Shown here one piece after another: positions 7,470 through 32,944 of a DNA stretch of 32,944 bases; within the stretch, counting starts at the first letter, position 1; every line of letters starts with the position of its first letter. The position numbers and the translations under genes were made by a program. The DNA is taken from contig NC_069008.1 of NCBI RefSeq assembly GCF_001194135.2, positions 6,679,679 to 6,712,622 of the forward strand. The letters run 5' to 3'. The DNA comes from Octopus bimaculoides. Its lineage: Eukaryota. The notes below the pieces were generated by a model. The model was not told where the DNA came from and made no database searches. It was given only the letters and a program-made list of their open reading frames with translations.

Positions 7470-10222
7470 TGAAGTACCGGCGGGCTGACCTATTATTTCA
7501 CTATGCCTTCTTTTTCACTTCTTCAATTTATAGTTGCATTGAGAAAATTTTGGACTGTGTTTCCTCTGTGTGCTGTCGGATGACTTCTGTTACCAGGATT
7601 TCAACTTCAATATCTATGCTTGGCCAGTTTAGGAAGCTTCGCATCCTTTTGTCGACCACATTTGATCTTTGTCTCGGTGATAAATCTGTCATGTCTCGCA
7701 TTTCTTTATATTTCTTCTAAAGTTACTGGTAGTTTACGCACGATGTTCCACATCACTTTTTTTTATTTCCGCTTCCGCTCTCAGTGCTGCTATTACAGTG
7801 TCATCCAGCAGTGTGTTATCTCTCGGAATTAACCTAGACAGACCATCAGCATATCCCAACTTTTTGAAGTCAGATATTCCATTCTATAATTGTAGTTTAA
7901 TAGAATGGTACCCCACAGCTGCAGTCTGTTTGCCGTAGGTGACGGGATTCCTTTCTTAGATCCGTATATCGTTAGTAGAGGTCTATGGTCCGTTTGCAAC
8001 CAAAAATGTCTGCTGTGAACGAACATTTTCACGCCAAATATAATAACCAATGCCTCTTTTTCAATCTCGCTGTAGCACTTTTCCGCCGGTAATGATGTCC
8101 TTGATGTATTAGCTATAGACTTTCTCTTGCCCTCGTTATCCTTGCGTAGGGGCACGGCCCCTATCCCATACTCGTTAGCATCTGTAGCTAGTATCATCTC
8201 TAACTTTGGGTCTAAATACGTAAGATACAAGTCTGAAGTTATCACAACTCGTTAAATGCTTTCTGGCATTTCTCTGCCCAAACTTATTTAGCTTTTCTTT
8301 TCAGTAATTCATTAAATGGTGACTTTACCTTATGTATATTTGGGAAATATACTTGGTAATAATTTACCAAACCTAGGAATGCCTGTAGCATTGTCATGTT
8401 TGTCGAGAGTGGCATATTCCGTATTGCCGCCGCCCTTGATGGGTCCGGTCTGCATCCACTTTTGTCCATTACTTGACTAGGTATTTTATTTTTTCATCAA
8501 ACATTTGCATTTTCCTCCCGTTTTAGCCCATATTCATTTATTCTCTCGAATATTTTCTTTGTGTTCGACATGTTGCACTCTAGACAGAATGTCATCTAAG
8601 TATGCGATGGCAAAGTCGTAATCACTAAACATCGCATCTATTATTCGTTGGAATATGGCGGGTACCACTTTTGCTCCTTACGGCAGTCGATCGAACTTGT
8701 ACAATCCACTGTGCGTGTTGATTGTTAGCAGATGTGTGCAATCTTCCTCTAACTGAATTTGAAAGTACGCCTTTGAGAGGTCTAACTTCCAGAAAATTTT
8801 CCCTCCATTTAATTTAGCAAATACTTTTCCTGAGCTTGGAAGTGGCTAATTATGTGTGATTAAACAGTCATTTAACCCGGTTGAGAAGTCTTCGCACACT
8901 CTTAGTGTATTATATTTTTTTACTTACCCGCCGGTGCTGTCCAGTCTGCATGGTCAATCTTTTCAATTATATTCAGGCTTTCCAGCCTCTCTAGCTCTTT
9001 TTTGACCTGGTCTACCGCCGCAAACGTTCCCTTTGGGTCTGAAAATAGGTGTTCAATTTTCTTTGATAGCAATCCTTGCTTTTGTTTCTGTGCAACAGCT
9101 TAGAAACTTTCCCAAAAGATTTTTTGGAAAATTTATCATTTTTCGTCTCAGTTATTTCGACTTGTTCAATCGTTTGATTGCTCCGTTTACGTTATTGCAC
9201 AAAACACTTCTGGGTACATCCTACAAGTTAAATTTCTCCACAAATTCGACGCCAAATAAATTCATTAGTTTTCTCAACACATAAACGTTCACTTTTTTGG
9301 TTCGACCTTTGAACATTATATTACAAACGCGTTCACCCATGAAATATAATTTTCTTCCCGTAACACCACGCGCTATTTCGTTTGAACTACAAAACTTTGG
9401 TTTACCCATTTGTTCCCATGTTTTCTTATTTATGATTATGATGCCACTTCTCGGGGTCTAATTGCATTCTGACACTAGTGGTTTCAATCCTCGCGTTCAC
9501 GAATTTTCTGTTTGTTGTAGTCACAAATTTTCCAGCTAACAAACTATTTATTTTCTCTTGTTTGTTCCATTTTCCTATCATTCTAGTTTTGCAGTGCGAT
9601 TTTATATATCCTGTAGACCCATTATGAAAACACTTTGCTTTTTTATGAGGACAGTCTTTTTTCAGGTGCATCCCCTCGCATCCCGATATCTTTTTGGTTT
9701 TCCTGCAACACATTCTTTGTCTTACGACTTTTTTGCATTGGTCTTAGGTGAAAACGCTCCGTTGAATTCTTTCCGTTGCATGCTTTAATTTCAATATCAT
9801 TTCACACACTTCCGACAGTTTCTACAATGTCAAATATTGGCTCATTTCCTGTTTTGCTTGGGTTTTCGTTCAGATTTCTGCTTCCCTTTTATCTTGTGCA
9901 AAGATCGAACACTTGAATGAATCTGGAGTAGGTATATCCAGCCTACACCTCTCACATTCTTTGTTGACTCTGCCTGTGTAAGTAGTGAAGTTTTCATCTT
10001 CGCTCTTTTCTATGTTTAAACATTTCCATCCAATATTAAACAGTTAGCTCTTTTCACTAAACATTTTGCACAAAATGTCAACTGTGTAGATGAAATTTAT
10101 GTCGGACGCATTTTTTAGCATTAGGAAGTTACTCTACTTCCCATGATTTGCTGTCGCTAATTTTCTTAAAACTAGACGCGTTTTCACTTCGTCCGTCCAA
10201 TCCGGACATTCTTTTTCAAAAC
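7470..10222 (-). mobile_element. Decayed Ty3/Gypsy (Mag/K02A2.6-like) gag-pol; no LTR recognised, integrase core missing
   Basis: Gag FEKECPDWTDEVKTRLVLRKL and EDENFTTYTGRVNKECE; knuckle remnant CPHKKAKC; protease remnant MQLD. RT KLDLSKAYFQI...GLYKFDRLP*G...PAIFQR...AIAYLDDIL (~8590-8850). RNase H LATDANEYGIGAV...YSEIEKEAL...LQTDHRPL (7829-8245). Many stops and frameshifts; left boundary approximate. Confidence 0.92.
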
Positions 10223-10974
10223 TTTTCTACTTACCAGTAGAATGTTTGATATGAACTCTGTAGTGACGACTTATTGCAGACGCCATTTTGGAACATTCAT
10301 CTACGCATGCGCATAGGATTAAAGCTTTCGAGAAATCTGNNNNNNNNNNNNNNNNNNNNNNNNNNNNNNNNNNNNNNNNNNNNNNNNNNNNNNNNNNNNN
10401 NNNNNNNNNTCACCATCAGTAGCTAGGCTTCAAACCCATATTGCCTTCGTCAATCTCGGCTGTTGACCAGGCAGGACGTAACTTGGACCAGCTCCTGGGA
10501 GATGGAATACTGATGGCGAGCGATGTCGCGATTCTATGAAAATGCCTTCATAGTTTTGTGTCTAACTAGCAACCCTGCTGCTTTTACAGCAAGGTGTCCT
10601 GGCTACCGATGTCCAGAGATGGAATGTTTATTCGGACAAAATAAATTATTGTTATTTGTCCTCGCTTTTTCCTTCCATGAACTATGTATGGAATTGTGAA
10701 GCACCCAGCAAGTGCTGAATCACATTTTCCTACAAGTCCAAAAGAAAAGTGAAGAAGTGTGAGAAAAGATCATTGATTGATTTGTGGTCGATTAAAAGCC
10801 ATTTCTCGTCCTGTAAAATCCGGAACAAACATTTAGCGATGTGAGGTTGTGATCAAACGAAATATTTAATCCTGAAGGTCATGGAACACTGACCCTTAAA
10901 CATGTATGTTGCCCTGTCTTATCCGTTAACATTCACCTCGACACGAGATAATTACTACGAATCATTATAATTAG
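10223..10974 (-). promoter_or_regulatory. Orphan ZNF 5' cassette (promoter, exon 1, donor GTAAGT at 10234-10229) with no ZNF CDS behind it
   Basis: Reverse complement is highly similar to 31989-32645 (upstream of gene E) and 11666-11937. The sequence switches to Gypsy gag 12 nt into the intron. Confidence 0.75.
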
Positions 10975-11410
10975 CGAGGAATGTGAAGACGCAGGCTGGA
11001 AAGCGGAATATTTTCCACTCGAAGTCGGATGTAGAGGGTTTGTTGGACACTGTGAGACGAGTGTTGTTATCGTTAGGCCTAACTCATCGTAAAGTAAATA
11101 CCACCACGATCGATATCCAAGCCACACTGGAAATGGCTAGCCACTGGATTTGGTTAAAAAGAGACGATTAGCGATGTCTAAAAGAATATTGAGCTGTATT
11201 TAATAACCTGTTGATCTAGCAAGTGGGGCCTCATATCAGTGAGGGGCCGGGGGCGGAGCGCATTCTTTCCTGTTGACCCCATACACTTGCTGGCTTCCGG
11301 TATACGGAGTTCTCGACTGGTAGCCTTTGCATGTGCAAGTTTTTTACAAAATATCTGGACACTTGTACTATCCCACATTTTTAAGGGCATTGTAGTATGT
11401 CTCCTTTGTT
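10975..11410 (+). mobile_element. HERO-clade RLE retrotransposon 3' remnant (with probable 3'UTR)
   Basis: EECEDAGWKAEYFPLEVGCRGF matches the HERO C-terminal PxEVGCRGF motif. It is the inverted paralog of ~15290-15810. Confidence 0.75.
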
Positions 11411-11665
11411 TTTTAAAGACAGAATAATGTAATCTGTTGGAGACTTGGCTGATATTTCTTCAAGGTCGAAAGATCACGCAGAGGCTCGCTCCAGTATACA
11501 TAATTATTATTGTGCTGTGTGATGCTGGATAAAATTAAAAACGTAAATTAACATAACTGAAGGTTTGTTACATTATGTTGGGGATTTTTAATATATGTCA
11601 CCGGTATCGTTTACAAAAGGGGAAAGAACATCACCGACACCGCCTATTGCAAATGTTGAGCTGAT

Positions 11666-12018
11666 CTAATTATAATGATTCGTAGTAATTATCTCGTGTC
11701 AAGGTAAATGTTAATGTATAAGACAGGGCAACATACATGTTTAAGGGTCAGTGTTTCATGACCTTCAGGATTAAATATTTCGTTTGATCACAACCTCACA
11801 TCGCTAAATGTTTGTTCCGGATTTTACAGGACGAGAAATGGCTTTTAATCGACCACAAATCAATCAATGAAATTTTCTCATACTTCTTCACTTTTCTTTT
11901 GGACTTTATATCAAACATTCTACTGGTGAGTAGAAAATATACATTTGCTCCATACATATAAACAGAGGTCTTTGATATCAGAGACAAGGAACTTTTTAAG
12001 AATTCCTCAAGAATTTCT
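11666..12018 (+). promoter_or_regulatory. 5' cassette of ZNF gene A with predicted 5'UTR intron 11926-12000 (GTGAGT...TTTTTAAG)
   Basis: The tcaaacattctactg|gtgagt donor and an AG exactly 18 nt before the ATG are conserved across paralogs. Confidence 0.7.
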
Positions 12019-13272
12019 ATGGAGAACGTTAATCACTCGGACACTTGTAAGACGACTGTTTTTAAGAATGGAGATGCAGTTAGAATGACAGACAGAGATG
12101 AGAAAGCTGAAGACAAAAGTGTTCCTGAATATCACTGTGAGATTTATAGGAAGACATTCTCTTCAGAAGATGAAGTCTTGTCGCACGAAGAAATACACGG
12201 GAAGGAAAAACGGTTCCGTTGTGAAATATGTTGCAAATGTTTTACCACTAATGGTCATTTAAGGACACATAAAAGATTACACACAGGGGAAAAACCCTTC
12301 CACTGTGAAATATGTGGGAAATATTTTACTCGTAGTAGTAGTTTAAAGCAACATAAAAGAGTACATACAGGAGAAAGACCCTTCCACTGTGAAATATGTG
12401 GGGAATCATTTGGTCGTAGTAGTACATTAACAAGACACAAACTTGTACATACCAGGGAAAAACGTTTCCCTTGTGAAATATGTGGGAAATGTTTTGCCAC
12501 TAATACTATTTTAAAGGTACACAAAAGAATACATACAGGAGAAAAACCCTTCCACTGTGAAATATGTGGGAAACGTTTTACCTCTAATAGTAATTTAAAG
12601 ACACATAAAAGAATACACACAGGAGAAAAACCCTTCCACTGTGAAACATGTGGGAAATCATTTGGTTGTAATAGTGCATTAACTAGTCACAGAATTGTAC
12701 ACACTGGGGAAAAACGTTTCCATTGTGAAACATGTGGGAATTGTTTTACCTCTAATAGGGATTTAAAGAGGCATGAAAGAATACATACAGGAGAAAAACC
12801 CTTCCACTGTGAAATATGTGGGAAATGTTTTACCTCTGATAATAATTTAAAGAGACATAAAAGAATACATACAGGAGAAAGACCCTTCCATTGTGAAATA
12901 TGTGGAGAATCATTTCGTTTTAGTAGCACATTAAGAGCACACAAAACTGTACACACTGGGGAAAGACGTTTCCATTGTGAAATATGTGGGAAACGTTTTA
13001 TCAATAATTCTCATTTAAAGCGGCATACAAGAATACATACAGGTGAAAAACCCTTCAATTGTGAAATATGTGGGGAATCATTTGTTTGCAGTGGTACATT
13101 AAGAAAACATGAAGTTGTACACACTGGGGAAAAACGTTTCAATTGTGAAATATGTGGGAAATGTTTTACCTCTAATAGTAGTTTAAAGGGACATAAAAGA
13201 ATACACACAGGAGAAAAAAACCTTTCCACTGTGAAATATGTGAGAAATCATATAGTTCTAGTATTGCATTAA
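12019..13272 (+). CDS. Tandem C2H2 zinc-finger protein (gene A): 12 canonical fingers plus a degenerate N-terminal finger
   Basis: 417-aa ORF with repeated CxxC-x12-HxxxH and TGEKPF linkers. The C-terminus shifts out of frame at an A7 run (13214-13220). Confidence 0.93.
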   Translation: MENVNHSDTCKTTVFKNGDAVRMTDRDEKAEDKSVPEYHCEIYRKTFSSEDEVLSHEEIHGKEKRFRCEICCKCFTTNGHLRTHKRLHTGEKPFHCEICGKYFTRSSSLKQHKRVHTGERPFHCEICGESFGRSSTLTRHKLVHTREKRFPCEICGKCFATNTILKVHKRIHTGEKPFHCEICGKRFTSNSNLKTHKRIHTGEKPFHCETCGKSFGCNSALTSHRIVHTGEKRFHCETCGNCFTSNRDLKRHERIHTGEKPFHCEICGKCFTSDNNLKRHKRIHTGERPFHCEICGESFRFSSTLRAHKTVHTGERRFHCEICGKRFINNSHLKRHTRIHTGEKPFNCEICGESFVCSGTLRKHEVVHTGEKRFNCEICGKCFTSNSSLKGHKRIHTGEKNLSTVKYVRNHIVLVLH

Positions 13273-13344
13273 GAAAGCACAAAACTGTACACACTGGAAA
13301 AGACGTTTCCAATGTGAAACATATGGGAAATGACAGTGAATAGT

Positions 13345-13485
13345 CATCAATATTTAACATCACATTTTCCATGCTGGCATGGGTTGGCCAGTTTGACTTG
13401 AGTTGGCAAACTGGAGAGCTGCACAAGGCTCCAGCTGTTTGTTTTGGCCTGGTTTCTGTGCTTGAATGCCTTTTCTAATGCCAAC
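13345..13485 (-). mobile_element. RTE-tail/SINE copy in the predicted 3'UTR of gene A (antisense)
   Basis: Reverse complement gttggcattagaaaaggcattc...ccaacccatgccagcatggaaaa matches the 1046-1180 tail. Confidence 0.8.
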
Positions 13486-13742
13486 ATGAAATGGTGAAAC
13501 ATGTTAGAAATCATTTTCTCTTCTCTTCTTGTAATCCACAAATACCATCCGGAGAAATTTCTGTTCGCTTTTAATTTTTTGACTGAGACACAATTTCATG
13601 AATCATGATGAGGAAAATGCAAATGAGAGACATTCATCAGTATTTTAACTTCCACATTTTCACACTTGACTGGGTCAGATAGGATTTGTTGAGTCAATCA
13701 CTGTGGTCAGATGCCACTCTTCCAATTAATTACATTCCCAGA

Positions 13743-13883
13743 GTGGTTGGTGTTAGGAAGGGCATCCAGCCAGAGAAACCATGCCAAGTCAGACGGGAGT
13801 GTGGTGCTGCTTCCAGCTTACCAACTCTGGACTAACCGTCCAACCCATGCCAGCATGAACGACAGATTCTAAATGATGATGAT
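13743..13883 (+). mobile_element. RTE-tail/SINE copy in the predicted 3'UTR of gene A (sense)
   Basis: gtggttggtgttaggaagggcatccagcc...ccaacccatgccagcatg...(gat)n. Confidence 0.85.
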
Positions 13884-14221
13884 TTGCCCCTGATTGGTAA
13901 TATTTTCATATAGGAATGGGCTTCCTTCAATTTCTGTCTGTCATATCTACTCACATGTCTTTGGGTGGACTCATTGTTGTGGGCTTATGGAATTACTGGC
14001 ATACTGAAGTCGTCAATAAAGACAGGCGTTATTGAAATATGTACATAATTATAGATGCTAATTTGTGTATGAGGATTTAAATGAAAATGTCAAAATAACA
14101 AAACAAAAACTAAATAATTTTTTTCACTCCCCAAATATTATAAAGGATTGATTACTTTTAATATGTTCCATATTTTGTAGTCAATGATTTACTCGTTATT
14201 CTACATTTTTTTATTTTCTAC

Positions 14222-14227
14222 AATAAA
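14222..14227 (+). terminator. Putative polyadenylation signal of gene A
   Basis: AATAAA followed by GT-rich tgttgtagatgtgtttgt; conserved at orthologous positions behind genes C and D. Confidence 0.55.
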
Positions 14228-14420
14228 TGCTTTCCAAAATTTCATAAATGTTGTAGATGTGTTTGTATTCAAATTCACCAAAATATACATATGTTTGCAT
14301 ATGGGTACATGATCATAGAGNNNNNNNNNNNNNNNNNNNNNNNNNNNNNNNNNNNNNNNNNNNNNNNNNNNNNNNNNNNNNNNNNNNNNNNNNNNNNNNN
14401 NNNNNNNNNNNNNNNNNNNN

Positions 14421-14515
14421 TCTTCAGCTTTCTCATCTCTGTCTGTCATTCTAACTGCATCTCCATTCTTTAAAACAGTCGTCTTACAAGTGTCCGAGTG
14501 ATTAACATTCTCCAT
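14421..14515 (-). CDS. ZNF paralog B, 5' start only (remainder in or lost at the N gap)
   Basis: MENVNHSDTCKTTVLKNGDAVRMTDRDEKAE is nearly identical to gene A. A 99-nt 5'UTR intron is predicted at 14534-14632 (GTGAGT, CTGAC branch, TTTTTAAG). Confidence 0.7.
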
Positions 14516-15289
14516 ATAAATTCTTCAGGAATTCTTAAAAAGTGGGTAAATTGTCAGTTTCTTGTATTAGATATCACAGATCTCTGTTTAAAGCAGAGGA
14601 GCAAATGTAATGAAGTTATATTTTCTACTCACCAGTAGAATGTTTGANNNNNNNNNNNNNNNNNNNNNNNNNNNNNNNNNNNNNNNNNNNNNNNNNNNNN
14701 NNNNNNNNNNNNNNNNNNNNNNNNNNNNNNNNNNNNNNNNNNNNNNNNNNNNNNNNNNNNNNNNNNNNNNNNNNNNNNNNNNNNNNNNNNNNNNNNNNNN
14801 NNNNNNNNNNNNNNNNNNNNNNNNNNNNNNNNNNNNNNNNNNNNNNNNNNNNNNNNNNNNNNNNNNNNNNNNNNNNNNNNNNNNNNNNNNNNNNNNNNNN
14901 NNNNNNNNNNNNNNNNNNNNNNNNNNNNNCCCCTAAACACGCAGCTTGCCCTGTCCTATCCACAAACATTAAAATTCATCTTCTCACGAGCCAATTACTA
15001 CGAATTAGATCAACTTAGCTTGTGCAATGGACGGTGTCGTTGGTATTCTTTCTCCCTTTGTAAACGATACCGGTGACATGTATTAAAAATCCCCAACGTA
15101 ATGTAACAAACGTTCAATTCTATTAATTTACGTTTTTAATTGTATCCAACATNNNNNNNNNNNNNNNNNNNNNNNNNNNNNNNNNNNNNNNNNNNNNNNN
15201 NNNNNNNNNNNNNNNNNNNNNNNNNNNNNNNNNNNNNNNNNNNNNNNNNNNNNNNNNNNNNNNNNNNNNNNNNNNNNNNNNNNNNNNNG

Positions 15290-16545
15290 GAGACATACTA
15301 CAATGCCCTTAAAAATGTGGGATAGTACAAGTGTCCAGCTGTTTTGCAAACAACACGCACATGCAAAGGCTACCAGTCGAGAACTCCGTATACCGGAAGC
15401 CAGCAANNNNNNNNNNGTCGAGAACTCCGTATACCGGAAGCCAGCAAGTGTATGGGGTCAACAGGAGAGAAAGCGCTCCGTCCCCCACCTAACTGATATG
15501 AGGCCCCACTTGCTAGATGAACGGATTATTGATTACAGCTCAATATTCTTTTACACATCCCTCATCGTCTCTTTTTAACCGAATCCAGTGGCTAGCATTT
15601 TCCACTGTCGTTTGGATATTGATCACGGTGGTATTTACTTTACGATGAGTTAGGCCTAACGTTAACCATATTCGTCTCATACTATGTCCAACAAAATCCT
15701 CTACATCCGACTTCGAGTGGAAAATATTCCGCTTTCCAGCCTGCGTCNNNNNNNNNNTCGAGTGGAAAATATTCCGCTTTCCAGCCTGCGTCTTCACATT
15801 CCTCGCTGAAGTTTACATAGCTGTCAGTCTTTCGAGCCCGAGCGGCGCTCCATGTTATCTTCATAAGGAACCGTTAACTCGACTAGATTCACAACTTTCT
15901 TTCATTCAAACCATATCAAAATGTCCGGTTTTTTTTTTTTTCGTAACTTGGATGGGAAAGAGTCCCTGACACCCTGAAAATTCTGCAGTCACCTTCCACC
16001 ATTCTACTTTTCGTTGCTCACAGGAAGCTTGTTGTTCTTCTTGAAACAGATCTGCTGTCCTGAGCGCACGTAGGTAATGAAATCTCTAGTTGGTAAAGGA
16101 CCAAGTTGNNNNNNNNNNNNNNNNNNNNNNNNNNNNNNNNNNNNNNNNNNNNNNNNNNNNNNNNNNNNNNNNNNNNNNNNNNNNNNNNNNNNNNNNNNNN
16201 NNNNNNNNNNNNNNNNNNNNNNNNNNNNNNNNNNNNNNNNNNNNNNNNNNNNNNNNNNCATAGAATGAACGAATCAGAAAACTTAGCCGAGATGTGGTCC
16301 ACCTCCATCTCTTATTCCGACTTATTTTGTTCTCAACATGTTCCCCCCATTTCGTCATCTGTCCTTGTTGAATACATTGGATCGTTTTCACGCTGTTGCT
16401 AACAACAGATCTGCATTTGTTCTGCATCATTCTTGCAAACGGTTTGAACTTATTTGTGCCAAAACCAAGTCCCTTCCGATGATATTGCGTTGCACCCACC
16501 ATATCTTGATGCGTAAGAGAAGAAAAGATGGGCTTCATTGATTCT
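15290..16545 (-). mobile_element. HERO-clade RLE non-LTR retrotransposon, 5'-truncated and decayed
   Basis: GATQYHRKGLGFG...QQGQMTKW...RLSFLIRSFY; ITYVRSGQ; PDILIWFE*KKVVNLVELTVPYEDNME; PLEVGCRGF. These are HERO-type RLE motifs (PD...ELTVPWE). Confidence 0.8.
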
Positions 16546-18875: not shown

Positions 18876-19303
18876 TCCTTTTTAATTTGATTAAATAGGC
18901 ACCAAATTTAATTACCTTCGACCTCCATAATTAATATAATCTCATCCAAATGCAACTTCACAACTTACTTTCATTNNNNNNNNNNNNNNNNNNNNNNNNN
19001 NNNNNNNNNNNNNNNNNNNNNNNNNNNNNNNNNNNNNNNNNNNNNNNNNNNNNNNNNNNNNNNNNNNNNNNNNNNTTAGTATTAAATATCTATAACTACA
19101 AGGAGTTGTCAATTATGCTGTAAATACCTCCGATGGGTTGTTCTGTGTTTGCTTTGCTGGATGGTAATATTTTCTGGAGTCTATATTAGCAGTACTAGGT
19201 GTTGGTCATGGTAACCATAGAAATATGCTGTATGACATGGTCAAAGAAAAGGAAATAAAACTTGAGGATGTACCAGTCTCCATATTCTCTATTCTTTTAA
19301 CTC

Positions 19304-19720
19304 ATCATCATCATTTCACATCCATTTTGCCTGATGACATTGGTTGGATGGTTTGAAAGGAGCTGCCCAGGCTCCCTCTCTGTCTTGGCATGGTTTCTGG
19401 ATGGATGTCCTTCCTAATGCCAACCACTTTACAGAGTGTAGTGGAGGCTTTTTACATAGCACCAGCACCTACAAACACGCAAGATGAAGATTACTCAGCC
19501 AGAAAGGGTTGCAAGAATCACCACACTTTTCCTTCGCTTGATGTGTCTTTTCAAGCCCAACAAACCACCAAGAGACTTGGTACCCTGTCATCCACTCTGT
19601 CAGTCCCAACGTCTGTAGATCTTTTCTTATCACTTTGTGCTATGTCTTCCTGGGTTTACCCCTTCCACATGTGTCTACAATTAGAGATTAGCACCTTTGA
19701 TGCAACTGTTCTCATTCCTA
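19304..19720 (-). mobile_element. RTE LINE 3' end and tail (inverted paralog of 27390-27785)
   Basis: (cat)n tail, ccttcctaatgccaacc core, and cttcctgggtttaccccttccacatg (GRGxPRK remnant on the minus strand). Confidence 0.75.
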
Positions 19721-22414: not shown

Positions 22415-22420
22415 TTTATT
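22415..22420 (-). terminator. Putative polyadenylation signal of gene C
   Basis: AATAAA on the minus strand, in a block homologous to 14030-14320 and 28690-29000. Confidence 0.5.
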
Positions 22421-22944
22421 GAAGAGAATAACAAAATGTAGAATAACGAGTGAATCATTGACCAACAAAATATTGAACATATTAAAAATAATCAATCCTT
22501 TATAATATTTGGGGAGTGATAAAAATAATTTACTTTTGTCCTCATACACACATTAGCATCTTTAATCATGTATATATTTCAATAATGTCATTGTCATTAC
22601 TGACAACTTCAGTATGCTAGAAATCCTATAAACTCACAACAGTGAGTCCACCCGAAGACATGTGAGTAGATGTGACAGAAAGAAACTGAAGGAAGTTCAT
22701 TGTGTATGTGTGCCTGTTTCACTTGACATAGCATGGTAGTTGTGAGTGTCACCAGTATACAAGTAGTGTTCTTCATTTCTACTCTTCCATGAAAACATGA
22801 TGAATGATGGGGAAAAAGTGGCATCAGGCCATAGAAAATCTCTCGCACCCATTCTAGCATGGAAAGATGGACATATAAATGCTGATGTAGGTCTGATACC
22901 AGTATTTTTCTTATGATTCACAAAATCATGTCTCTGTCTAAAAC

Positions 22945-24285
22945 CTAACAGTGAACAGATCTTTTATGACACTTCAATTTACTTGAAGATACATAAGATT
23001 TCTCACAAATTTCACACTGGAATGGTTTCTCTCCTGTGTGATAACGTTTGTGCTCAATTAAATGAGAATTCTGGATGAAAGATTTTCCACATATTTCACA
23101 ATGGAATGGTTTCTCTCCTGTGTGTGTTCTTACATGTCTGCTTAAAACTGCTTTAGAGGCAAAACATTTCCCACAAATTTCACAGTGGAAAGGTTTTTCC
23201 CCAGTGTGTATTCTTCTGTGTTTTGTTAATGTACCACTACAACCAAACTGTTTTTCACATATTTCACATTGGAATGGTTTCTCTCCAGTATGTATTCTTT
23301 TGTGTCTTTTTAGGACGTAAATAGTAACAAAATATTTCTCACATATTTCACATTGAAATGCTTTTTCTTCTGTGTGACATCGTTTGTGCTCAAATAGATG
23401 AGAATTCTGACCGAAAGATTTTCCACAAATTTCACAGTGGAAAAGTTTTACTCCAGTATGTATTCTTTCATGTCTCTTTAAGTCACCATTAGTTGGAAAA
23501 CATTTCCCACATATTTGACAAGGGAAAGGTTTTTCCCCTGTGTGTATTCTTTTATGCCTTGATAAGATGCTACAAGAACCAAAAGACTTCTCACATATTT
23601 TGCAATGGAAACGTTTTTCCCCAGTGTGTACACTTTTGTGTGTGGTTAATGCACTACTAGAACCAAATAATTTCCCACATATTTCACATCTAAATGGTTT
23701 TTCTCCAGTGTGAATTCTTATGTGTCTTCTTAGTGAGGTACTGGAAACAAATGATTTCTCACATATTTCACATTGGAATGGTTTTTCTCCCCTGTGTATT
23801 TTCATGTGTATCTTTAAATTTCCATTTGTGAAGTAAGATTTCTCACACATTTTGCACTGGAATGGTCTTTCTCCTGTGTGATAACGTTTGTGAACCACAA
23901 GATAAGCATTATCATGAAATGATTTCCCACATATTTCACAGTGAAAAGCTTTCTCACCAGTGTGTAGCCTGTGGTGTGTTTTTAAATCGTGTTTGTAAAC
24001 AAAAGATTTCCAACATATTTTACACTGGAATGGTTTCTCCCCAGTGTGACTACGTTTGTGAACTACAAGCTGAGATTTACGAAGAAATGATTTCCCACAT
24101 ATTTCACAACGGAACCGTTTTTCCTTCTTGTGTATTTCTTCGTGCGACAAGTCTTCATCCTCTGAAGAGAATGTCTTCTTACAAATCTCACGGCGATATT
24201 CAGGAACATTTTTGTCTTCAGTTTTCTCATCTCCATTCTTACAAACAATTACGTTACAAGTGTCCAAGTGATCAACGTTCTCCAT
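22945..24285 (-). CDS. Tandem C2H2 zinc-finger protein (gene C): 14 fingers (last HX4H) plus a degenerate N-terminal finger
   Basis: Uninterrupted 446-aa ORF with TGEKPF linkers. A 118-nt 5'UTR intron is predicted at 24304-24421, with AG 18 nt before the ATG. Confidence 0.95.
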   Translation of the reverse strand: MENVDHLDTCNVIVCKNGDEKTEDKNVPEYRREICKKTFSSEDEDLSHEEIHKKEKRFRCEICGKSFLRKSQLVVHKRSHTGEKPFQCKICWKSFVYKHDLKTHHRLHTGEKAFHCEICGKSFHDNAYLVVHKRYHTGERPFQCKMCEKSYFTNGNLKIHMKIHRGEKPFQCEICEKSFVSSTSLRRHIRIHTGEKPFRCEICGKLFGSSSALTTHKSVHTGEKRFHCKICEKSFGSCSILSRHKRIHTGEKPFPCQICGKCFPTNGDLKRHERIHTGVKLFHCEICGKSFGQNSHLFEHKRCHTEEKAFQCEICEKYFVTIYVLKRHKRIHTGEKPFQCEICEKQFGCSGTLTKHRRIHTGEKPFHCEICGKCFASKAVLSRHVRTHTGEKPFHCEICGKSFIQNSHLIEHKRYHTGEKPFQCEICEKSYVSSSKLKCHKRSVHC

Positions 24286-24289
24286 ATTA

Positions 24290-25735
24290 ATTCTTCAGCA
24301 ATTCTTTAAAAAATGGAGAAATATCTGAGTTAACGTATTATGTTTCACTTTCTTGTCTTAAATATCACAGACCTCTGTTTACATGTGTGGAACAAGTGTA
24401 CCGAACATATTTTCTACTCACCAGTAGAATATTTGATATACAGTGCAGATGAAAAGTGTAGAACGTCGTTAATTGATCTGTTGTTGTTTAAAAGCCATTT
24501 CCTCTCCTGTAAAATAGGAAACAACCAATTAACTTTGTAAAGCTGAAATATTTAATCATAAAGGTGATGGAACACCGACCCGCAAACCTGTAGGTCGCCC
24601 TGTCTTATCCACAAACATTAACGTTCTTCTTAACATGAGATAATTATTACATATGATATAATTAGATCGGTTCAACTAATTAGAAACACGCACTGTAGGC
24701 ATCGTTATTGATATGTAACCGGTGACATATATTTAGAGTCGCCAACATAATACAACAGAAACGGCTTCAATTATATTAATTTTCGTCTTTAGTTGTATCC
24801 AACATCACTCAAAACAATAATTATGGTAAATCTGGTGAAGTATCAAAATTTACCATAACTATTACGTACAAGGGAGAAAGTCATTTGTTTATATATGACT
24901 CAATAAGCTGTCAAACATAAATTGATGGAAAGACGGGGCTCTATTTTTATTTCATTCTATTACATTTTTTGTGGATTATTTGTTTAAAATTAACAATAAG
25001 CCAAAACAGCGTATTGAGAAAAGTTGTATAATTAGGATTGCATTGTAGACTGTCGCCTTTCTTTTCTTAAGACACAACGGTGTGATTTGAAAGAGACTTG
25101 GCTGCTATTTCCAGAAGATCGAAAGACCTTACACAGACTCTCTCCTTTGTACATAATAGTTACTGTTAAGCCCTATTTTAAAGACTTAAATTAATATAAT
25201 TGAAGCTGTTTCTGTTGTATTATGTTGGCGACTCTAAATATATGTCACCGGTTATATGTCAACAACGATGGCCTACAGTGCGTGTTTCTAATTAGTTGAA
25301 CCGATCTAATTATATCATATGTAATAATTATCTCATGTTAAGAAGAACGTTAATATTTGAGGATAAGACAGGGCAACCCACAGGTTTGAGGGTTGGTGTT
25401 CCATCACCTTTATGATTAAATATTTCGTTTCATCATAGCTTTACATCGTTAATTGGTTGTTCCCTATTTTACTGGACAGGGTAAATAGCATTTAATCAAA
25501 AAGAAATCAATCAACGAACTTTCCTCAGCCTTCTCCACTTTACATTTGAACCATATATCAAACATTCTACTGGTGAGTAGAAAATATATCTACATTGCAT
25601 CTGTTCCACACATGTAAACAGAGATCTGTGATATTTAAGTCAAGAAACTGAACGATAATAGATTAACGCAGAAACATTTGTCAGCTTTTTAAGAATCGCG
25701 TAAGAATTAATATGAAGCACAGTGATCACTTGGAC
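24290..25735. repeat. Inverted duplication of the ZNF 5' cassette (arms ~24290-24785 and ~25190-25735)
   Basis: For example, 24630-24780 is nearly the exact reverse complement of 25192-25345; spacer ~400 bp. Confidence 0.85.
25085..25140 (+). repeat. Short dispersed repeat (ttggctgctatttctagcaggtcga-like); other copies near 5708, 11444, 16905(-), 30860(-)
   Basis: Recurring ~35-50 bp motif, probably a SINE fragment. Confidence 0.5.
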
Positions 25736-25836
25736 ATTTCTAACGCAATCATTTTTAAATGTACAGATACAGTTAAACAAACTAATCGAGAAAGCTGAAG
25801 AGAATGTTCCTGAATATCGCTGTGAGATTTGTTTCC
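25545..25836 (+). pseudogene. ZNF 5' stub 1 (donor, intron, ATG 25712, frameshifted leader, ends at EYRCEIC)
   Basis: MKHSDHLDISNAIIFKCTDTV is homologous to the ZNF leader; premature stop. Confidence 0.75.
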
Positions 25837-27389: not shown

Positions 27390-27785
27390 TTACCTCATAT
27401 GAATGAGAACAGTTGCATCAACGGTGCTAATCTCTAATTGTAGAGGCACCATGTGGAAGGGGTAGACCCAGGAAGACGTAGCGCAATGTGATCAGAAAGG
27501 ATTTAAAACTCTTGGTGGTTTGTTCTGCTTGAAAAGACACATCAAACGAAGGAAAAATGTGGTGGCCCTTGCAACCCTCTCCTGCTAAGCATCCCTCATC
27601 TTACATGTTCGTAGGTGCTACTGCCATGTAAAAAGTCCCCACTACAATCTGTAAATTGGTTGGTATTAGGAAGGGCATCCGGTCATACAAACCATGCCAA
27701 GACAGACAGGGAGCCTGGGCAGCTCCTTTCAAACCATCCAACCAATGTCAGCAGGCAAAATGGATGTGAACTGATGATGATGAGT
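27390..27785 (+). mobile_element. RTE LINE 3' end and tail
   Basis: atgaatgagaacagttgcatc...catgtggaaggggtagacccaggaagac (CGRGRPRKT remnant), ttaggaagggcatcc core, (gat)n tail. Confidence 0.75.
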
Positions 27786-28804
27786 TAAAAGAATAGAGAA
27801 TATGGAGACTGGTACATCCTCAAGTTTTATTTCCTTTTCTTTGACCATGTCATACAGCATATTTCTATGGTTACCATGACCAACACCTAGTACTGCTAAT
27901 ATAGACTCCAGAAAATATTACCATCCAGCAAAGCAAACACAGAACAACAGCATAATTGACAACTCCTTGTAGTTATAGATATTTAATACTAATCCGTGTG
28001 GTTAGNNNNNNNNNNNNNNNNNNNNNNNNNNNNNNNNNNNNNNNNNNNNNNNNNNNNNNNNNNNNNNNNNNNNNNNNNNNNNNNNNNNNNNNNNNNNNNN
28101 NNNNNNNNNNNNNNNNNNNNNNNNNNNNNNNNNNNNNNNNNNNNNNNNNNNNNNNNNNNNNNNNNNNNNNNNNNNNNNNNNNNNNNNNNNNNNNNNNNNN
28201 NNNNNNNNNNNNNNNNNNNNNNNNNNNNNNNNNNNNNNNNNNNNNNNNNNNNNNNNNNNNNNNNNNNNNNNNNNNNNNNNNNNNNNNNNNNNNNNNNNNN
28301 NNNNNNNNNNNNNNNNNNNNNNNNNNNNNNNNNNNNNNNNNNNNNNNNNNNNNNNNNNNNNNNNNNNNNNNNNNNNNNNNNNNNNNNNNNNNNNNNNNNN
28401 NNNNNNNNNNNNNNNNNNNNNNNNNNNNNNNNNNNNNNNNNNNNNNNNNNNNNNNNNNNNNNNNNNNNNNNNNNNNNNNNNNNNNNNNNNNNNNNNNNNN
28501 NNNNNNNNNNNNNNNNNNNNNNNNNNNNNNNNNNNNNNNNNNNNNNNNNNNNNNNNNNNNNNNNNNNNNNNNNNNNNNNNNNNNNNNNNNNNNNNNNNNN
28601 NNNNNNNNNNNNNNNNNNNNNNNNNNNNNNNNNNNNNNNNNNNNNNNNNNNNNNNNNNNNNNNNNNNNNNNNNNNNNGTTGAACCTATACCAATCAGATG
28701 CTGGCTGGGTATTCTAAGATCATGTACCCACGTGCAAACATATGTATATTTTGGTGAATTTCAATACAAACACATGTACAACAATTATGAAATTTTGAAA
28801 ATCA

Positions 28805-28810: not shown

Positions 28811-29289
28811 GTAGAAAATAACAAAATGTAGAATAACAAGTGAATCATTGACTACAAAATATGGAACATATTAAAAGTAATCAATCCTTTATAATATTTG
28901 GGGAGTGAAAAATATTATTTAGTTTTTGTTTTGTTATTTTGACATTTTCATTTAAATCCTCATACACAAATTAGCATCTATAATTATGTACATATTTCAA
29001 TAATGCCTCTATCTTTATTGATGGCTAGTTATTACACAAACCCACAACAGTAAGTCCACCCAAAGAAATGTAAGATGTGACAGAAAGAAACTGAAGGAAG
29101 CCCATCGCATATGTGTGTCTGTTTGACTTGATATAGCATGGTAGTTGTGTCACCAATATACAAGAAGTGGCCTCCATTAAAATAACAGCAACCAGGAGCA
29201 TCTGTTGTCCATTGGAAATATCTTTCTCCAGTGTGTTTTCCTGGTGCTACTATATCATTTAGAATCTGTTGTCCATGGTGGCATGCGGT

Positions 29290-29390
29290 GCACAGTTTGG
29301 ACTAGGATGGTAAGCTGGAAGCAGCACCACACCCCTGTCTGACTTGGCATGGTTTCTCTGGCTGGATGCCCTTCCTAACACCAACCACTC
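29290..29390 (-). mobile_element. RTE-tail/SINE copy in the gene D 3' region (ortholog of 13743-13883)
   Basis: ggcatggtttctctggctggatgcccttcctaacaccaaccac. Confidence 0.8.
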
Positions 29391-29626
29391 TGGGAGTGTA
29401 ATTAATTGGGAAGAGTGGCTTCTGACCACAGAGATTGATTCAACAAATCCTGTCTGATCCAGTCAAGTGTGAAAATGTGGAAATTAAAATATTGATGAAT
29501 GTCTCTCTTTTGTATTTTCCTCATCATGATTCATGAAATTGTGTCTCAGTCTGAAAAATAACAGTGAACAGATCTATCTCCGGATGGTATTTGTGGATTA
29601 CAAGAAAGGAAGAGAAATTTCTAACA

Positions 29627-29757
29627 TGGCATTAGGAAGGGCATGCAGCCATAGAAACAAGGTCAAAACAGACAACTGGAGCAGCTCTCCGGCTTGCCAG
29701 CTCAAGTCAAACCGTCCAACCCATGCCAGCATGGAAAATATGATGTTGAATATTGAT
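29627..29757 (+). mobile_element. RTE-tail/SINE copy in the gene D 3' region (ortholog of 13345-13485)
   Basis: tggcattaggaagggcatgcagcc...ccaacccatgccagcatggaaaa. Confidence 0.8.
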
Positions 29758-29809: not shown

Positions 29810-30770
29810 TTACAGCTAAAAGGTTTCCCTCCAGAATGAATCCTTTTCTCATTCATTGATTCACTACAAGACTCAAAAGATTTTTCGCAGTGGGATGGTA
29901 TTTCCTCCTGTGTGACAACATTTGTGGTCAAGCAGACGACCACTCTGAGTAAAAAGTTTTCCAGTGGAAAGATCATTCTCCAGGATGTACTCTTTCCCAA
30001 GTTCTCAGGGTAATACTACAAAAGAATACCCACATATTTCACATTGGAATGGTTTCTCTCCAGTGACTTCGTTTATGAACTACAACCTCAAATTTATGGA
30101 AAAATGCTTTCCCACATATTTCACAATTACCGTTTTCTTCTAGAGTGTATTTTTTGTGGCGTGCATAACTAGATTGCTGAGGGAATACTTTCCCACATAT
30201 TTCACAGTGGAAGGGTTTTTCTCCTGTATGTATTCTTTTATGTCCCTTTAAAGCACTATTCTGGGTAAAACAATTACCACATATTTCACAGTGGAAGGGT
30301 TTTTCTCCTGTATGTATTCTTTTATGTCGCTTTAAAGCACTATTATGGGTAAAACAATTACCACATATTTCACAGTGGAAGGGTTTTTCTCCTGTATGTA
30401 TTCTTGTATGTCCCTTTAAATCACTATTATAGGTAAAACATTTCCCACATATTTCACAAGGGAAACGTTTTTCTGCAGCGTGTACAGCTTTGTGTCGTGT
30501 TAATGTACTACAAGAACCAAATGATTCCCCACATATTTCACAATGGAAACGTTTTTCCCCGGTGTGTACAGTTTTGTGTCTTGCTAATGTACTACTAAAA
30601 ACAAATGGTTTTCCACATATTTCACAGTGGAAGGGATTTTCTCCTGTATGTATGCCTTTATGTGCCTTTAAATGACTATTAGTGGAAAAACCTTTCCCAC
30701 ATATTTCACAATTGAAACGTTTTTCCACGGTGTGTACAGTTTTGTGTGCTGTTAATTTACCACTACAACT
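29810..30770 (-). pseudogene. ZNF gene D: 5'-truncated finger array (7 intact, 1 degenerate and 1 partial finger) with a frameshifted, decayed tail
   Basis: The ORF 30039-30893 is ZNF-like only from ~30770 downward. A 2-nt deletion in the last HTGEKP linker gives HWRETIPM*, and degenerate fingers continue to ~29810. No leader or ATG homolog is present. Confidence 0.8.
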
Positions 30771-31988
30771 ATAAGCAGAAACGATGTGGGCTTGAAAAAA
30801 CAAATAAATATTTAAATGATTTTTATACATGCGAAAGTTAGAAATAAAGAGGAGGGTGGTCTTGTGATGTGCTAGAAATAACAGCCAAATCATCCTTAAA
30901 TCAAAGTTCTACCGCTGAAAATATTTGAAATTTTTGTTTTAGTACCGAAACGACTCCTTCCATAGTTTTTAGGTGCCAAAAAAGAAAAGAAAAAAAGAGA
31001 AAGAAATTGCGAAAAACCGTCGTGAGGGGCATGGTGGGGATGGTGAAAAAAATAAACTTATATGGTCTTTATTTGAAACTCCGTATTTTCTAAACTCCTG
31101 TCCCCGCCTATTCGGAGAACATTTCATCCACATATTTTTTTACAACCGTAATGCATGCAGTCTGAATGATAATTCTATAAACTTTCATTTAAAAAAAATT
31201 CTTGAACGTTATCAGGGAAAAAATGGGGTGGTGTGAATTTTGTGAAACTGCTCTCCGAGCCCCCTAAGAATAATTCTTTCCCATAAATCCTCATATACTC
31301 TGAATGTACAGCATCTAAGGCAGATTTGTTGAAAATTTCGTGAAAATGTATCGATTTTTCTGGAAGTTATGCGGCGACGGAGGACACAACTGTGGTGAAA
31401 CGAGAAAACCTTCTGTCGATCCCATTGAAGCAGAATCGTCTGAATTTTCCGAAACTTCACTCTCCACTTGCGGAAAATGTCATTCACAACCAATTCCGAT
31501 ACAATCGGAATAAATCAACAGTCTTGTGTCCATTAAAATAACTAAGTCCTATTTAAGTAATACTTGTCATAATATGTAGTAATAAAGCTTATTACAGTTT
31601 CTCTCTCTCTCTGTCACACACACGTTAATATCTCTGTCCTTAAAAAAGCAAAGCTTGCTTGTAGGTTGCCCCACTGAAAACAGTAAATGAAATTCATAAT
31701 AGTTCAGATCTTCCGCATCATTTCAATTAATTCCGATAAGTTTATTTATTTTCCGAGAAACTAATGAGGATGGACGAGTCGGTGGTGTAGTCTCATATTT
31801 CTAGCAGTTCGCGTATTGTGTATTTGATACTATGCTTTTTATACACTCAGGGCATACCTACAAAACAGCGCCCCACCGAATGTGTTTGTTCGTAACTTTA
31901 TGGAAAATGGGTATTTTTAAATAAAACTTTCTACAAATATGCTTCTGNNNNNNNNNNNNNNNNNNNNNNNNNNNNNNNNNNNNNNNNT

Positions 31989-32752
31989 CTAATTATAATG
32001 ATTCGTAGTAATTATCTCGTGTGAAGGTAAATGTTAATGGATAAGACAGGGCAACATACATGTTTAAGGGTCAGTGTTCCATGACCTTCAGGATTAAATA
32101 TTTCGTTTGATCACAACCTCACATCGCTAAATGTTTGTTCCGGATTTTACAGGACGAGAAATGGCTTTTAATCGACCACAAATCAATCAATGAAATTTTC
32201 TCATACTTCTTCGCTTTTCTTTTGAACTAGTAGGAAAATGTGATTCAGCACTTGCAGGGTGCTTCACAATTCCATACATAGTTCATGGAAGGAAAAAGCG
32301 AGGACAAATAACAATAATTTATTTTGTCCGAATAAACATTCCATCTCTGGACATCGGTAGCCAGGACACCTTGCTGTAAAAGCAGCAGGGTTGCTAGTTA
32401 GACATAAAAATACGAAGGCATTTTCAGGCTACGACGTCGTTCGCCATCAGAATTGGCATTCTGCTTGGTCAACTGGCCGGGTTGAAGAGAAGGGAATTGC
32501 AGTGAAGCTGGCTGCTGCTGATGATTTCGCATGCGCATAAGTGTTTTCCATTAGATCTTCAGAAAGCTCTAATCCTATGCGTGGATTATGTTCCAAATTG
32601 GCGTCAGTACAAAGTTCACATCAAACATTCTACTGTTAAGCAGAAAATATAACTTCATTACATTTGCTCCATACATATAAACAGAGGTCTTTGATATCAA
32701 AGACAAGGAACTGACAATTTACCCACTTTTTAAGAATTCCTCAAGAATTTCT
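31989..32752 (+). promoter_or_regulatory. 5' cassette of ZNF gene E (99-nt intron equivalent 32636-32734; donor G changed to T)
   Basis: Homologous to 11666-12018 plus a ~390-bp extra segment; CTGAC at 32711 and AG at 32733-32734. Confidence 0.7.
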
Positions 32753-32944
32753 ATGGAGAACGTTAATCACTCGGACACTTGTAAGACGACTGTTTTTAAG
32801 AATGGAGATGCAGTTAGAATGACAGACAGAGATGAGAAAGCTGAAGACAAAAGTGTTCCTGAATATCACTGTGAGATTTATAGGAAGACATTCTCTTCAG
32901 AAGATGAAGTCTTGTCGCAGAAAGAAATACACGAGAAGGAAAAA
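32753..32944 (+). CDS. ZNF paralog E, 5' part (runs off the window)
   Basis: MENVNHSDTCKTTVFKNGDAVRMTDRDEKAEDKSVPEYHCEIYRKTFSSEDEVLSQKEIHEKEK; 189/192 nt identical to the start of gene A. Confidence 0.85.
   Translation, partial: MENVNHSDTCKTTVFKNGDAVRMTDRDEKAEDKSVPEYHCEIYRKTFSSEDEVLSQKEIHEKEK

What the first reader, a model, noticed from the sequence alone, without database searches (positions are those of the whole stretch)
13345..13883. Inverted SINE pair in the predicted 3'UTR of gene A: candidate long dsRNA/ADAR hairpin
Seen: two copies of the same RTE-tail repeat lie in opposite orientation ~257 nt apart, between the stop (13272) and AATAAA (14222). About 33/42 match in the first segment (most mismatches are G-U or A-C type), plus a perfect 18-nt CCAACCCATGCCAGCATG. 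Established: inverted SINEs in 3'UTRs (e.g. primate Alu pairs) form ADAR substrates that affect retention and stability, and coleoids have very high ADAR activity. Inference: a TE-derived post-transcriptional control module for this ZNF family.
Basis: partly seen in the sequence, partly recalled or inferred. Interest (0 to 1): 0.7.

Follow-up and report, generated by a model that had tools for sequence, protein, structure and literature searches.

The report
Ordinary inverted SINE pair behind ZNF gene
Two truncated copies of a very common octopus-type retroposon sit head-to-head just downstream of a zinc-finger gene and could fold into a roughly 110-bp RNA hairpin, but pairs like this are commonplace in this genome, and this one shows neutral decay rather than any sign of being a maintained regulatory element.

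Summary
The arms are 13344-13485 (minus orientation) and 13729-13886 (plus), 243-260 nt apart and 74.6% alike, with a perfect 18-mer. As RNA they are predicted to form a 112-bp imperfect duplex (-151 kcal/mol, z about -8).

The arms are 5'-truncated 3' ends of an abundant retroposon of about 500 nt with an (ATG)n tail. It makes up about 4% of sampled DNA. The two arms belong to different subfamilies. They landed in a stretch of decayed zinc fingers.

Paralogs show the history. Gene B in this window and four other paralogs have the spacer but neither arm. Five paralogs, including gene C in this window, inherited the whole module by gene duplication.

Nothing indicates selection for pairing:
- Only 1 of 112 pairs shows a change on both sides (0.9 expected by chance).
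- Arms swapped between paralogs pair as well as native partners.
- The arms diverge at least as fast as their flanks and carry deletions in three of five copies.
- 12-28% of copies of this family already have an inverted partner within 500 nt.

Verdict: a plausible incidental ADAR substrate of a well-described class, not a control module for the family. No RNA data could be reached, so transcription and editing remain untested.

The parts
12019..13272 (+). Gene A coding sequence, a C2H2 zinc-finger protein of 417 aa. It ends at TAA 13270-13272 after an apparent frameshift in an A-run near 13205-13215.
   Evidence: ORF list, translation, Pfam zf-C2H2 and zf-H2C2_2.
13273..13343 (+). Out-of-frame zinc-finger remnant. 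In phase 2 it reads as one more complete finger ending at TAG 13341-13343. All three frames stop before 13344.
   Evidence: Three-frame translation; 84-nt finger periodicity continues to 13332.
13330..13340 (+). Left copy of a putative target-site duplication, ATGACAGTGAA.
   Evidence: Compared with single-copy ATGATGGTTAAAT / ATGATAATGAAAT in empty-site paralogs L035-L038. This is an inference.
13344..13485 (-). Left arm: a 5'-truncated 3' end (142 nt) of the retroposon, subfamily 2, in antisense orientation relative to gene A.
   Evidence: Genome hits cover exactly 13344-13485 at 80-84% identity. It is 86.5% identical to the subfamily-2 consensus and 78% to the subfamily-1 consensus.
13486..13498 (+). 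Right copy of the putative target-site duplication, ATGAAATGGTGAA.
   Evidence: alignment.
13499..13574 (+). Decayed terminal zinc finger and ancestral stop. It is homologous to gene B's last intact finger and TAG stop; in gene A the aligned codon is TAA 13572-13574.
   Evidence: Alignment of the gene A, B and C 3' flanks.
13634..13721 (-). Older fragment of a related dispersed repeat inside the spacer, in the same orientation as the left arm. It is present in all paralogs, including those without arms.
   Evidence: Many hits at 76-83% identity on other chromosomes to query positions 149-236; present in L035-L038 and gene B.
13729..13886 (+). Right arm: a 5'-truncated 3' end (about 155 nt) of the retroposon, subfamily 1, in sense orientation, ending in an ATGATGATGA tail.
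   Evidence: Genome hits cover query positions 30-184 at 85-89% identity. It is 89.7% identical to the subfamily-1 consensus. Empty site: CCAATTAATA directly joined to TTTCCCC in L035.
14015..14020 (+). First AATAAA after the stop, lying in flank sequence shared only by paralogs. It is kept in gene C but reads AATAAC in L033, L034 and L039.
14029..14317 (+). Another dispersed AT-rich repeat.
   Evidence: Hits at 74-80% identity on many chromosomes; minus-strand AATAAA at 22415 and 28805.
29254..29757 (-). Paralogous copy of the whole module (both arms and the spacer) behind gene C (30039-30908, minus strand), 84.8% identical to gene A's module.
22530..22947 (-). Gene B's 3' flank, which has the spacer and distal flank but neither arm. 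It is an empty site for both insertions.
   Evidence: alignment.

Best explanation
The feature is a by-product of transposon history rather than a built regulatory element.

Two separate, 5'-truncated copies of a very abundant retroposon inserted in opposite orientation into the non-coding tail of a C2H2 zinc-finger gene. The element is about 500 nt long with an (ATG)n tail, and the two copies come from different subfamilies. The tail they landed in is a run of dead zinc fingers. Both insertions happened in the ancestor of a small clade of paralogs. The whole module was then copied along with the gene by local duplication, and it now exists in at least five places on this chromosome. Since then it has been decaying neutrally.

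Inferred, not shown: because no poly(A) hexamer occurs before 14015, an mRNA from gene A would carry both arms. These would fold into an imperfect duplex of about 112 bp closing a loop of about 250 nt. Such a duplex would be a promiscuous ADAR hyper-editing substrate, like the many other inverted-repeat pairs in this genome, with no specific selected role.
For: Shown here:
- The inverted repeat and its predicted stability.
- The repeat family is dispersed on many chromosomes.
- It is a discrete element of about 490-540 nt with an (ATG)n tail.
- It makes up 4.3% of 58 kb of unrelated DNA, matching the published 4% SINE content of O. bimaculoides (PMC12988792).
- The arms belong to different subfamilies, and the inferred ancestral arms were only 82.5% alike.
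- Empty sites for both arms exist in L035-L038 and in gene B, with the spacer present.
- The module is shared by gene C, L033, L034 and L039.
- There is no covariation: 1 of 112 pairs changed on both sides against 0.9 in shuffles, and 90.8% of cells paired against 90.6% shuffled.
- Within-gene arm duplexes average -127.9 kcal/mol against -133.4 for cross-gene combinations.
- Among paralogs, arm identity is 0.81 and 0.84 against 0.89 for the unique spacer and 0.84 for the flank. The arms and the old-repeat spacer segment carry higher gap fractions (0.14-0.24) than the unique spacer and flank (0.08-0.09), and arm deletions occur in gene C, L033 and L034.
- 3 of 25 copies and 15 of 54 copies have an inverted partner within 500 nt.
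- There is no poly(A) hexamer between 13273 and 14015, and there are stops in all frames before 13344.

Established background: metazoan, including octopus, hyper-editing targets dsRNA formed by nearby inverted young repeats (PMC5625713, PMC9989829).
Against: - No RNA data were reachable, so transcription of gene A, the real 3' end and any editing are untested.
- The neutrality tests rest on only five paralogs, one with assembly gaps, so weak selection cannot be excluded.
- All five clade members still retain at least part of both arms.
- The contig ends at 14320 in an assembly gap, and the ORF ends through a frameshift. Gene A could therefore be a pseudogene or locally misassembled.
- The frequency of inverted partners comes from about 160 kb of loci that were not a random sample.
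Confidence: 0.75

Rival explanations
1. One reading: the hairpin is a selected post-transcriptional control module for this ZNF family, acting through ADAR editing, nuclear retention or stability.
For: A stable predicted duplex sits in the likely 3'UTR. The module is retained, at least in part, in all five paralogs of its clade. There is a precedent in inverted Alu pairs in primate 3'UTRs (my own knowledge) and strong octopus hyper-editing (PMC5625713).
Against: There is no covariation, and swapped arms pair as well as native partners. The arms diverge as fast as the flanks or faster and carry deletions that remove parts of an arm in 3 of 5 copies. The module is absent from gene B and from L035-L038. 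The pair was never near-perfect, with ancestral arms about 82% alike. Such pairs are common by chance.
Confidence: 0.05
2. The pair is inert DNA that is never co-transcribed. Either gene A is silent or a pseudogene, or its mRNA ends or is spliced before the right arm.
For: The ORF ends through a frameshift in an A-run, and the downstream fingers are dead. The locus is heavily gapped, with an inverted gene fragment directly after the gap at 14321.
Against: There is a 417-aa ORF with intact fingers. No poly(A) hexamer of 16 variants occurs between the stop and 14015. Published work reports that about half of octopus TE insertions are transcribed in some tissue and that ZNF genes are expressed in neural and embryonic tissue (PMC12988792).
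Confidence: 0.17
3. The hairpin is a source of small RNAs (an endo-siRNA or hpRNA-type locus) directed against the retroposon family.
For: Only the existence of a long hairpin made of transposon sequence.
Against: The duplex is imperfect, with a longest perfect run of 20 bp. There is no evidence of conservation, and no small-RNA data are available.
Confidence: 0.02
4. The pair is a single foldback or MITE-type element with terminal inverted repeats, or a chance similarity.
For: A first alignment of dispersed copies seemed to show terminal inverted repeats.
Against: That appearance was an artefact of mixing strand orientations, and it disappeared once the copies were oriented. The spacer between the arms is ancestral gene flank present in arm-less paralogs. 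The arms belong to different subfamilies. Chance is excluded.
Confidence: 0.01

Closest known systems
Inverted-repeat Alu (IRAlu) pairs in primate 3'UTRs
   Same: Two oppositely oriented copies of an abundant short retroposon lie a few hundred nt apart, downstream of a stop codon. They are predicted to form a >100-bp imperfect intramolecular duplex, the classic promiscuous ADAR substrate.
   Different: This is a different, unrelated repeat family in a mollusc-type genome. The arms are truncated 3' ends of about 150 nt from two subfamilies and only about 75% alike. No editing, retention or stability effect has been shown here.
Genome-wide hyper-edited inverted-repeat dsRNAs of Octopus bimaculoides and other Metazoa (Porath et al. 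2017, PMC5625713; Zhang et al. 2023, PMC9989829)
   Same: The architecture is the same: neighbouring reverse-oriented young repeats within 2 kb. The pair meets the paper's loose criterion of at least 65% identity.
   Different: It fails the paper's 'long, nearly perfect' criterion of more than 95% identity over at least 40 bp. Membership in the edited set is untested at this locus.
Octopus SINE family said to make up about 4% of the genome (Albertin 2015, as cited in PMC12988792 and PMC9068888)
   Same: Abundance is about 4.3% of sampled DNA. The element is short and non-autonomous, dispersed on all large scaffolds, and enriched around ZNF clusters.
   Different: I could not compare it with the published consensus. 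No tRNA, 5S or 7SL head was detected, and no partner LINE was identified.

Membership tests
Inverted-repeat retroposon pair acting as an intramolecular dsRNA / ADAR hyper-editing substrate | Two copies of the same repeat family in opposite orientation, close together (within 2 kb) | tested here: met
   Arms 13344-13485(-) and 13729-13886(+), 243-260 nt apart. They are the same family but different subfamilies.
Inverted-repeat retroposon pair acting as an intramolecular dsRNA / ADAR hyper-editing substrate | Predicted long, stable duplex | tested here: met
   112 bp at -151.6 kcal/mol, with z = -8.25 and -8.5 against shuffles. It meets the criterion of at least 65% identity but not the criterion of more than 95% over 40 bp in PMC5625713.
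Inverted-repeat retroposon pair acting as an intramolecular dsRNA / ADAR hyper-editing substrate | Both arms lie in one transcript (3'UTR) | not testable with these tools
   Sequence is only consistent with this: all frames stop before 13344, and there is no poly(A) hexamer before 14015. No RNA data were available, and the exact look-up of the product found nothing.
Inverted-repeat retroposon pair acting as an intramolecular dsRNA / ADAR hyper-editing substrate | Clustered A-to-G mismatches in RNA relative to DNA | not testable with these tools
   No read data were available.
Selected cis-regulatory RNA structure | Compensatory base changes that keep the pairs | tested here: not met
   1 of 112 pairs changed on both sides against 0.9 expected; the covariation score was 0.064 against 0.063 in shuffles. 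Cross-paralog duplex energies are no worse than native ones.
Selected cis-regulatory RNA structure | Slower divergence than neighbouring neutral sequence, and presence across the gene family | tested here: not met
   Arm identity is 0.81 and 0.84 against 0.89 (unique spacer) and 0.84 (flank), and the arms carry more indels than the unique spacer and flank. The module is absent from gene B and L035-L038.
SINE in the strict sense (pol-III head plus LINE-derived tail) | Short, non-autonomous, high-copy and dispersed, with a discrete 5' end | tested here: met
   Full-length copies are 490-540 nt with shared ends. The family makes up 4.3% of sampled DNA, and the first-look searches found more than 1,900 candidates.
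SINE in the strict sense (pol-III head plus LINE-derived tail) | A head derived from tRNA, 5S or 7SL | tested here: inconclusive
   No Rfam match at E <= 1 inside the element, and no ARAGORN tRNA in seven full-length copies. Degenerate heads can escape both tools.
SINE in the strict sense (pol-III head plus LINE-derived tail) | A 3' tail shared with an RTE-clade LINE partner | not tested
   Only indirect evidence: an (ATG)n microsatellite tail and no poly(A) tail. RTE elements are known to be active in octopus (PMC9115989). No LINE with this tail was recovered.
Foldback / MITE element | Terminal inverted repeats within one mobile unit | tested here: not met
   The apparent terminal inverted repeat was an orientation artefact. 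The spacer is ancestral flank.

The most novel reading that the evidence does not exclude
The hairpin, created by two chance retroposon insertions into the dead terminal fingers of a ZNF gene, was co-opted as a working dsRNA element. Possible roles are a local ADAR target controlling nuclear retention or stability, or a source of small RNAs against the same retroposon family. On this reading, its inheritance by all five members of a young ZNF subclade reflects that use rather than simple hitch-hiking.
Probability: 0.04. Interest if true: 0.5.

Novelty: new member of a known kind. Interest (0 to 1): 0.14.

Why it matters
It matters little as an individual locus. DsRNA formed by inverted repeats is already described as the main ADAR substrate across animals, and octopus is already known as the strongest hyper-editor. 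This pair is one of what my samples suggest are very many such pairs in the genome.

The locus is still a tidy worked example of three things. Retroposon insertions can be dated against gene duplication by using empty-site paralogs. The '3'UTR' of expanding octopus ZNF genes can be a graveyard of dead zinc fingers. And a TE-derived hairpin can spread through a gene family simply by hitch-hiking. If arm-bearing and arm-less paralogs (A and C against B) were compared in RNA-seq, they would form a natural experiment on what such hairpins do.

Tried and rejected
1. An apparent terminal inverted repeat in the family consensus suggested a MITE. It was an artefact, because genome-search loci keep their genome orientation. 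It disappeared after the copies were oriented.
2. The search for homologous proteins with gene A's product was swamped by generic C2H2 proteins from vertebrates and returned no near-identical octopus record or transcript.
No transcript contig could therefore be obtained.
I used the roughly 160 kb of loci already held instead.
5. Rfam and ARAGORN searches for a pol-III head in full-length copies found nothing.
6. The original octopus genome paper could not be opened under the PMC id I recalled. Its figures are cited second-hand from PMC12988792 and PMC9068888.
7. I did not verify which species the genome belongs to. Its 2.34 Gb size, heavily gapped scaffolded assembly, roughly 4% content of this repeat family and C2H2 clusters are consistent with Octopus bimaculoides, but that is an inference.

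Full report

Yes. The repeat finder reports two adjoining inverted segments: 13370-13415/13812-13857 (46 nt, 83% complementary) and 13437-13485/13746-13794 (49 nt, 76%). Aligning the left arm with the reverse complement of the right arm shows similarity along about 140 nt.

A global alignment gives 103 matches, 20 transitions, 15 transversions and 14 gap columns, which is 74.6% identity. In the RNA duplex the transitions correspond to 12 G.U and 8 A.C oppositions.

The 18-mer CCAACCCATGCCAGCATG is perfectly complementary between 13370-13387 and 13840-13857. With up to three mismatches it occurs five times in the window, against 0.01 expected.

As RNA, 13345-13883 folds to -196.6 kcal/mol against -141.9 +/- 6.6 for shuffles, z = -8.25. 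The arms alone give a duplex of 112 bp, including 11 G.U, with perfect runs of 20 and 18 bp, at -151.6 kcal/mol. The same pairing dominates both the MFE and the centroid structure when the whole stretch 13273-14040 is folded, z = -8.5.

**2. What are the arms?**

The window lies on a large scaffold of a 2.34-Gb genome. Each arm matches many places on nearly all large scaffolds. The right arm matches at 85-89% identity over 13729-13883, and the left arm at 80-84% over exactly 13344-13485.

After the dispersed copies were oriented correctly, they define a discrete element of about 490-540 nt. It ends in ...CCAACCCATGCCAGCATGGACAAC.GA..TTAAATGATGATGATGA, an (ATG)n microsatellite tail with no poly(A). 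Both arms are therefore 5'-truncated 3' ends.

The family makes up 4.3% of 58 kb of unrelated DNA, about one copy per 4 kb, and the window holds about nine copies. This matches the published statement that SINEs make up about 4% of the Octopus bimaculoides genome and dominate its repeat landscape (PMC12988792, PMC9068888). The species identity of the genome is my inference.

The arms belong to different subfamilies whose consensuses differ by 11%. The right arm is 89.7% identical to subfamily 1 and 82.6% to subfamily 2. The left arm is 78.3% and 86.5% respectively. The arms inferred for the common ancestor of the paralogs were only 82.5% alike, so this duplex was never near-perfect.

No tRNA, 5S or 7SL head was found in full-length copies, and no partner LINE was identified. 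'SINE' and 'RTE tail' therefore remain plausible labels, not tested ones.

**3. What is the setting?**

Gene A (12019-13272) encodes a 417-aa C2H2 zinc-finger protein. Its ORF ends after an apparent frameshift in an A-run. Another frame reads one more complete finger and stops at TAG 13341-13343, one base before the left arm. All three frames stop before 13344.

The sequence after the left arm is not an ordinary UTR. Gene B's last intact finger and its TAG stop align to gene A 13505-13574. The more distant paralogs show decayed fingers across the same region. The arms therefore sit in a graveyard of dead terminal fingers.

No AATAAA, ATTAAA or any of 14 weaker hexamer variants occurs on the + strand between 13273 and 14015. 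It is conserved in gene C only. The second, at 14222, lies inside another dispersed AT-rich repeat (14029-14317) and is conserved at the homologous position behind genes B and C.

On sequence grounds, then, an mRNA from gene A would include both arms. That is an inference: no RNA data were reachable. The contig ends in an assembly gap at 14321.

**4. History from paralogs**

The non-repeat spacer finds the same module elsewhere on the chromosome. Five places carry both arms:
- gene A
- gene C in this window (29254-29757, 84.8% identical)
- L033
- L034, which has lost the outer half of its left arm
- L039, an unplaced contig with gaps

Five places have the spacer but neither arm: L035-L038 and gene B in this window.

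For the right arm, the empty site reads CCAATTAATA directly joined to TTTCCCCATGATTGG, where gene A has CCAATTAATTA + element + TTTGCCCCTGATTGG. The left arm is flanked by ATGACAGTGAA and ATGAAATGGTGAA, where the empty sites have one such stretch, so this looks like a target-site duplication of about 12 nt.

The spacer is ancestral, so these were two separate insertions and not one composite element. They occurred before the five-member clade diversified, and the module then spread by gene duplication. An older fragment of a related repeat (13634-13721) is shared by all paralogs.

**5. Is pairing maintained?**

I found no evidence that it is.
- On the five-paralog alignment, only 1 of 112 pairs shows a change on both sides, against 0.9 in shuffles. 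The fraction of cells paired (90.8%) equals the shuffled value (90.6%), and the covariation score is 0.064 against 0.063.
- Left arms pair with right arms of other paralogs as well as with their own, at -133.4 against -127.9 kcal/mol.
- Every arm pairs much better with the family consensus than with its partner.
- Mean identity among paralogs is 0.81 (left arm) and 0.84 (right arm), against 0.89 (unique spacer) and 0.84 (distal flank).
- The arms carry more indels than the unique spacer and flank: a 7-nt and an 18-nt deletion in gene C's left arm, loss of the tail in L033's right arm, and loss of half of L034's left arm.
- The perfect 18-mer is simply the most conserved block of the whole repeat family.

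**6. How unusual is such a pair?**

It is not unusual. Of 25 dispersed copies with 1.5-kb flanks, 3 have an inverted partner within 500 nt. With both subfamily consensuses as probes, 15 of 54 evaluable copies do. A properly random genome sample could not be drawn, so these figures are rough. They still imply that such pairs are very numerous genome-wide.

The literature already states that most metazoan A-to-I editing lies in dsRNA formed by nearby inverted young repeats. It also reports that O. bimaculoides has the strongest hyper-editing signal of 19 species, with more than a million sites (PMC5625713, PMC9989829). By the criteria of PMC5625713, this pair passes the loose test of at least 65% identity within 2 kb. 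It fails the 'long, nearly perfect' test of more than 95% over at least 40 bp.

**7. Verdict**

The pair is a hairpin-forming inverted retroposon pair that probably lies within the 3'UTR, and it is a likely incidental ADAR substrate.

The functional half, a control module for this ZNF family, is not supported. The module is restricted to one small clade, it arose from two chance insertions, it was inherited passively, and it is decaying like its surroundings.

It is a new instance of a well-known kind, and its interest is low. The only modestly useful angle is that arm-bearing and arm-less paralogs sit side by side and could serve as a natural comparison in existing RNA-seq data.

Noticed in passing
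window 10734-10974 and 11666-11906: A 241-nt inverted repeat, 97% complementary and 691 nt apart, ends 113 nt upstream of gene A's ATG. It is not a dispersed transposon: all 40 scored genome matches lie in ZNF clusters on the same chromosome, so it is the family's own 5' region present twice head-to-head. The far copy extends to 10506 and abuts an assembly gap, so it is probably the 5' end of a divergent paralog or an assembly artefact. If the two copies were ever co-transcribed, they would form a far better dsRNA than the SINE pair.
   Followed up: partly
window 24248-24791 and 25179-25749: A similar inverted repeat (about 550-nt arms, 84% identity) overlaps the start of gene B and its upstream region. 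This suggests that inverted duplication of the 5' region recurs in this ZNF cluster.
   Followed up: no
window 14421-14647: A 227-nt contig lies between two N gaps and carries an inverted copy of a ZNF gene's 5' end (MENVNHSDTCK...), 92.5% identical to 32621-32847. Further on, 15003-15747 mirrors 10988-11671. Either a convergent paralog lies tail-to-tail with gene A inside the gaps, or the scaffold is mis-joined.
   Followed up: partly
window 13205-13215: Gene A's ORF leaves the zinc-finger frame at an A-run (GGAGAAAAAAACC). The next finger is complete in another frame and ends at TAG 13341-13343. This could be a genuine truncating frameshift or a homopolymer error in a draft assembly.
   Followed up: partly
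window 14029-14317: A separate AT-rich dispersed repeat (74-80% identity on many chromosomes) supplies the AATAAA at 14222. That hexamer is conserved behind genes A, B and C, so it is a possible transposon-derived poly(A) signal for this ZNF subfamily.
   Followed up: partly
window 19076-19574 and 27509-27992: A 500-nt inverted duplication (89.6% identity), including one copy of the retroposon with identical internal breakpoints (19302-19452 and 27631-27783), brackets the region containing gene B.
   Followed up: no
dispersed copies L016, L019, L029 (family consensus): The full-length retroposon consensus contains an internal tandem duplication of a unit of about 190 nt (GGGCCTCACNGAGGCAATGAC...GGCACGTAAAAGCACC) ahead of the 150-nt tail.
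   Followed up: no
window 7829-8251 (minus strand) and 9426-9743 (minus strand): An LTR-retrotransposon RNase H fragment (Pfam PF17917, E = 2.5e-19) lies upstream of gene A, next to an ORF that resembles a gag zinc knuckle but has no Pfam hit.
   Followed up: partly
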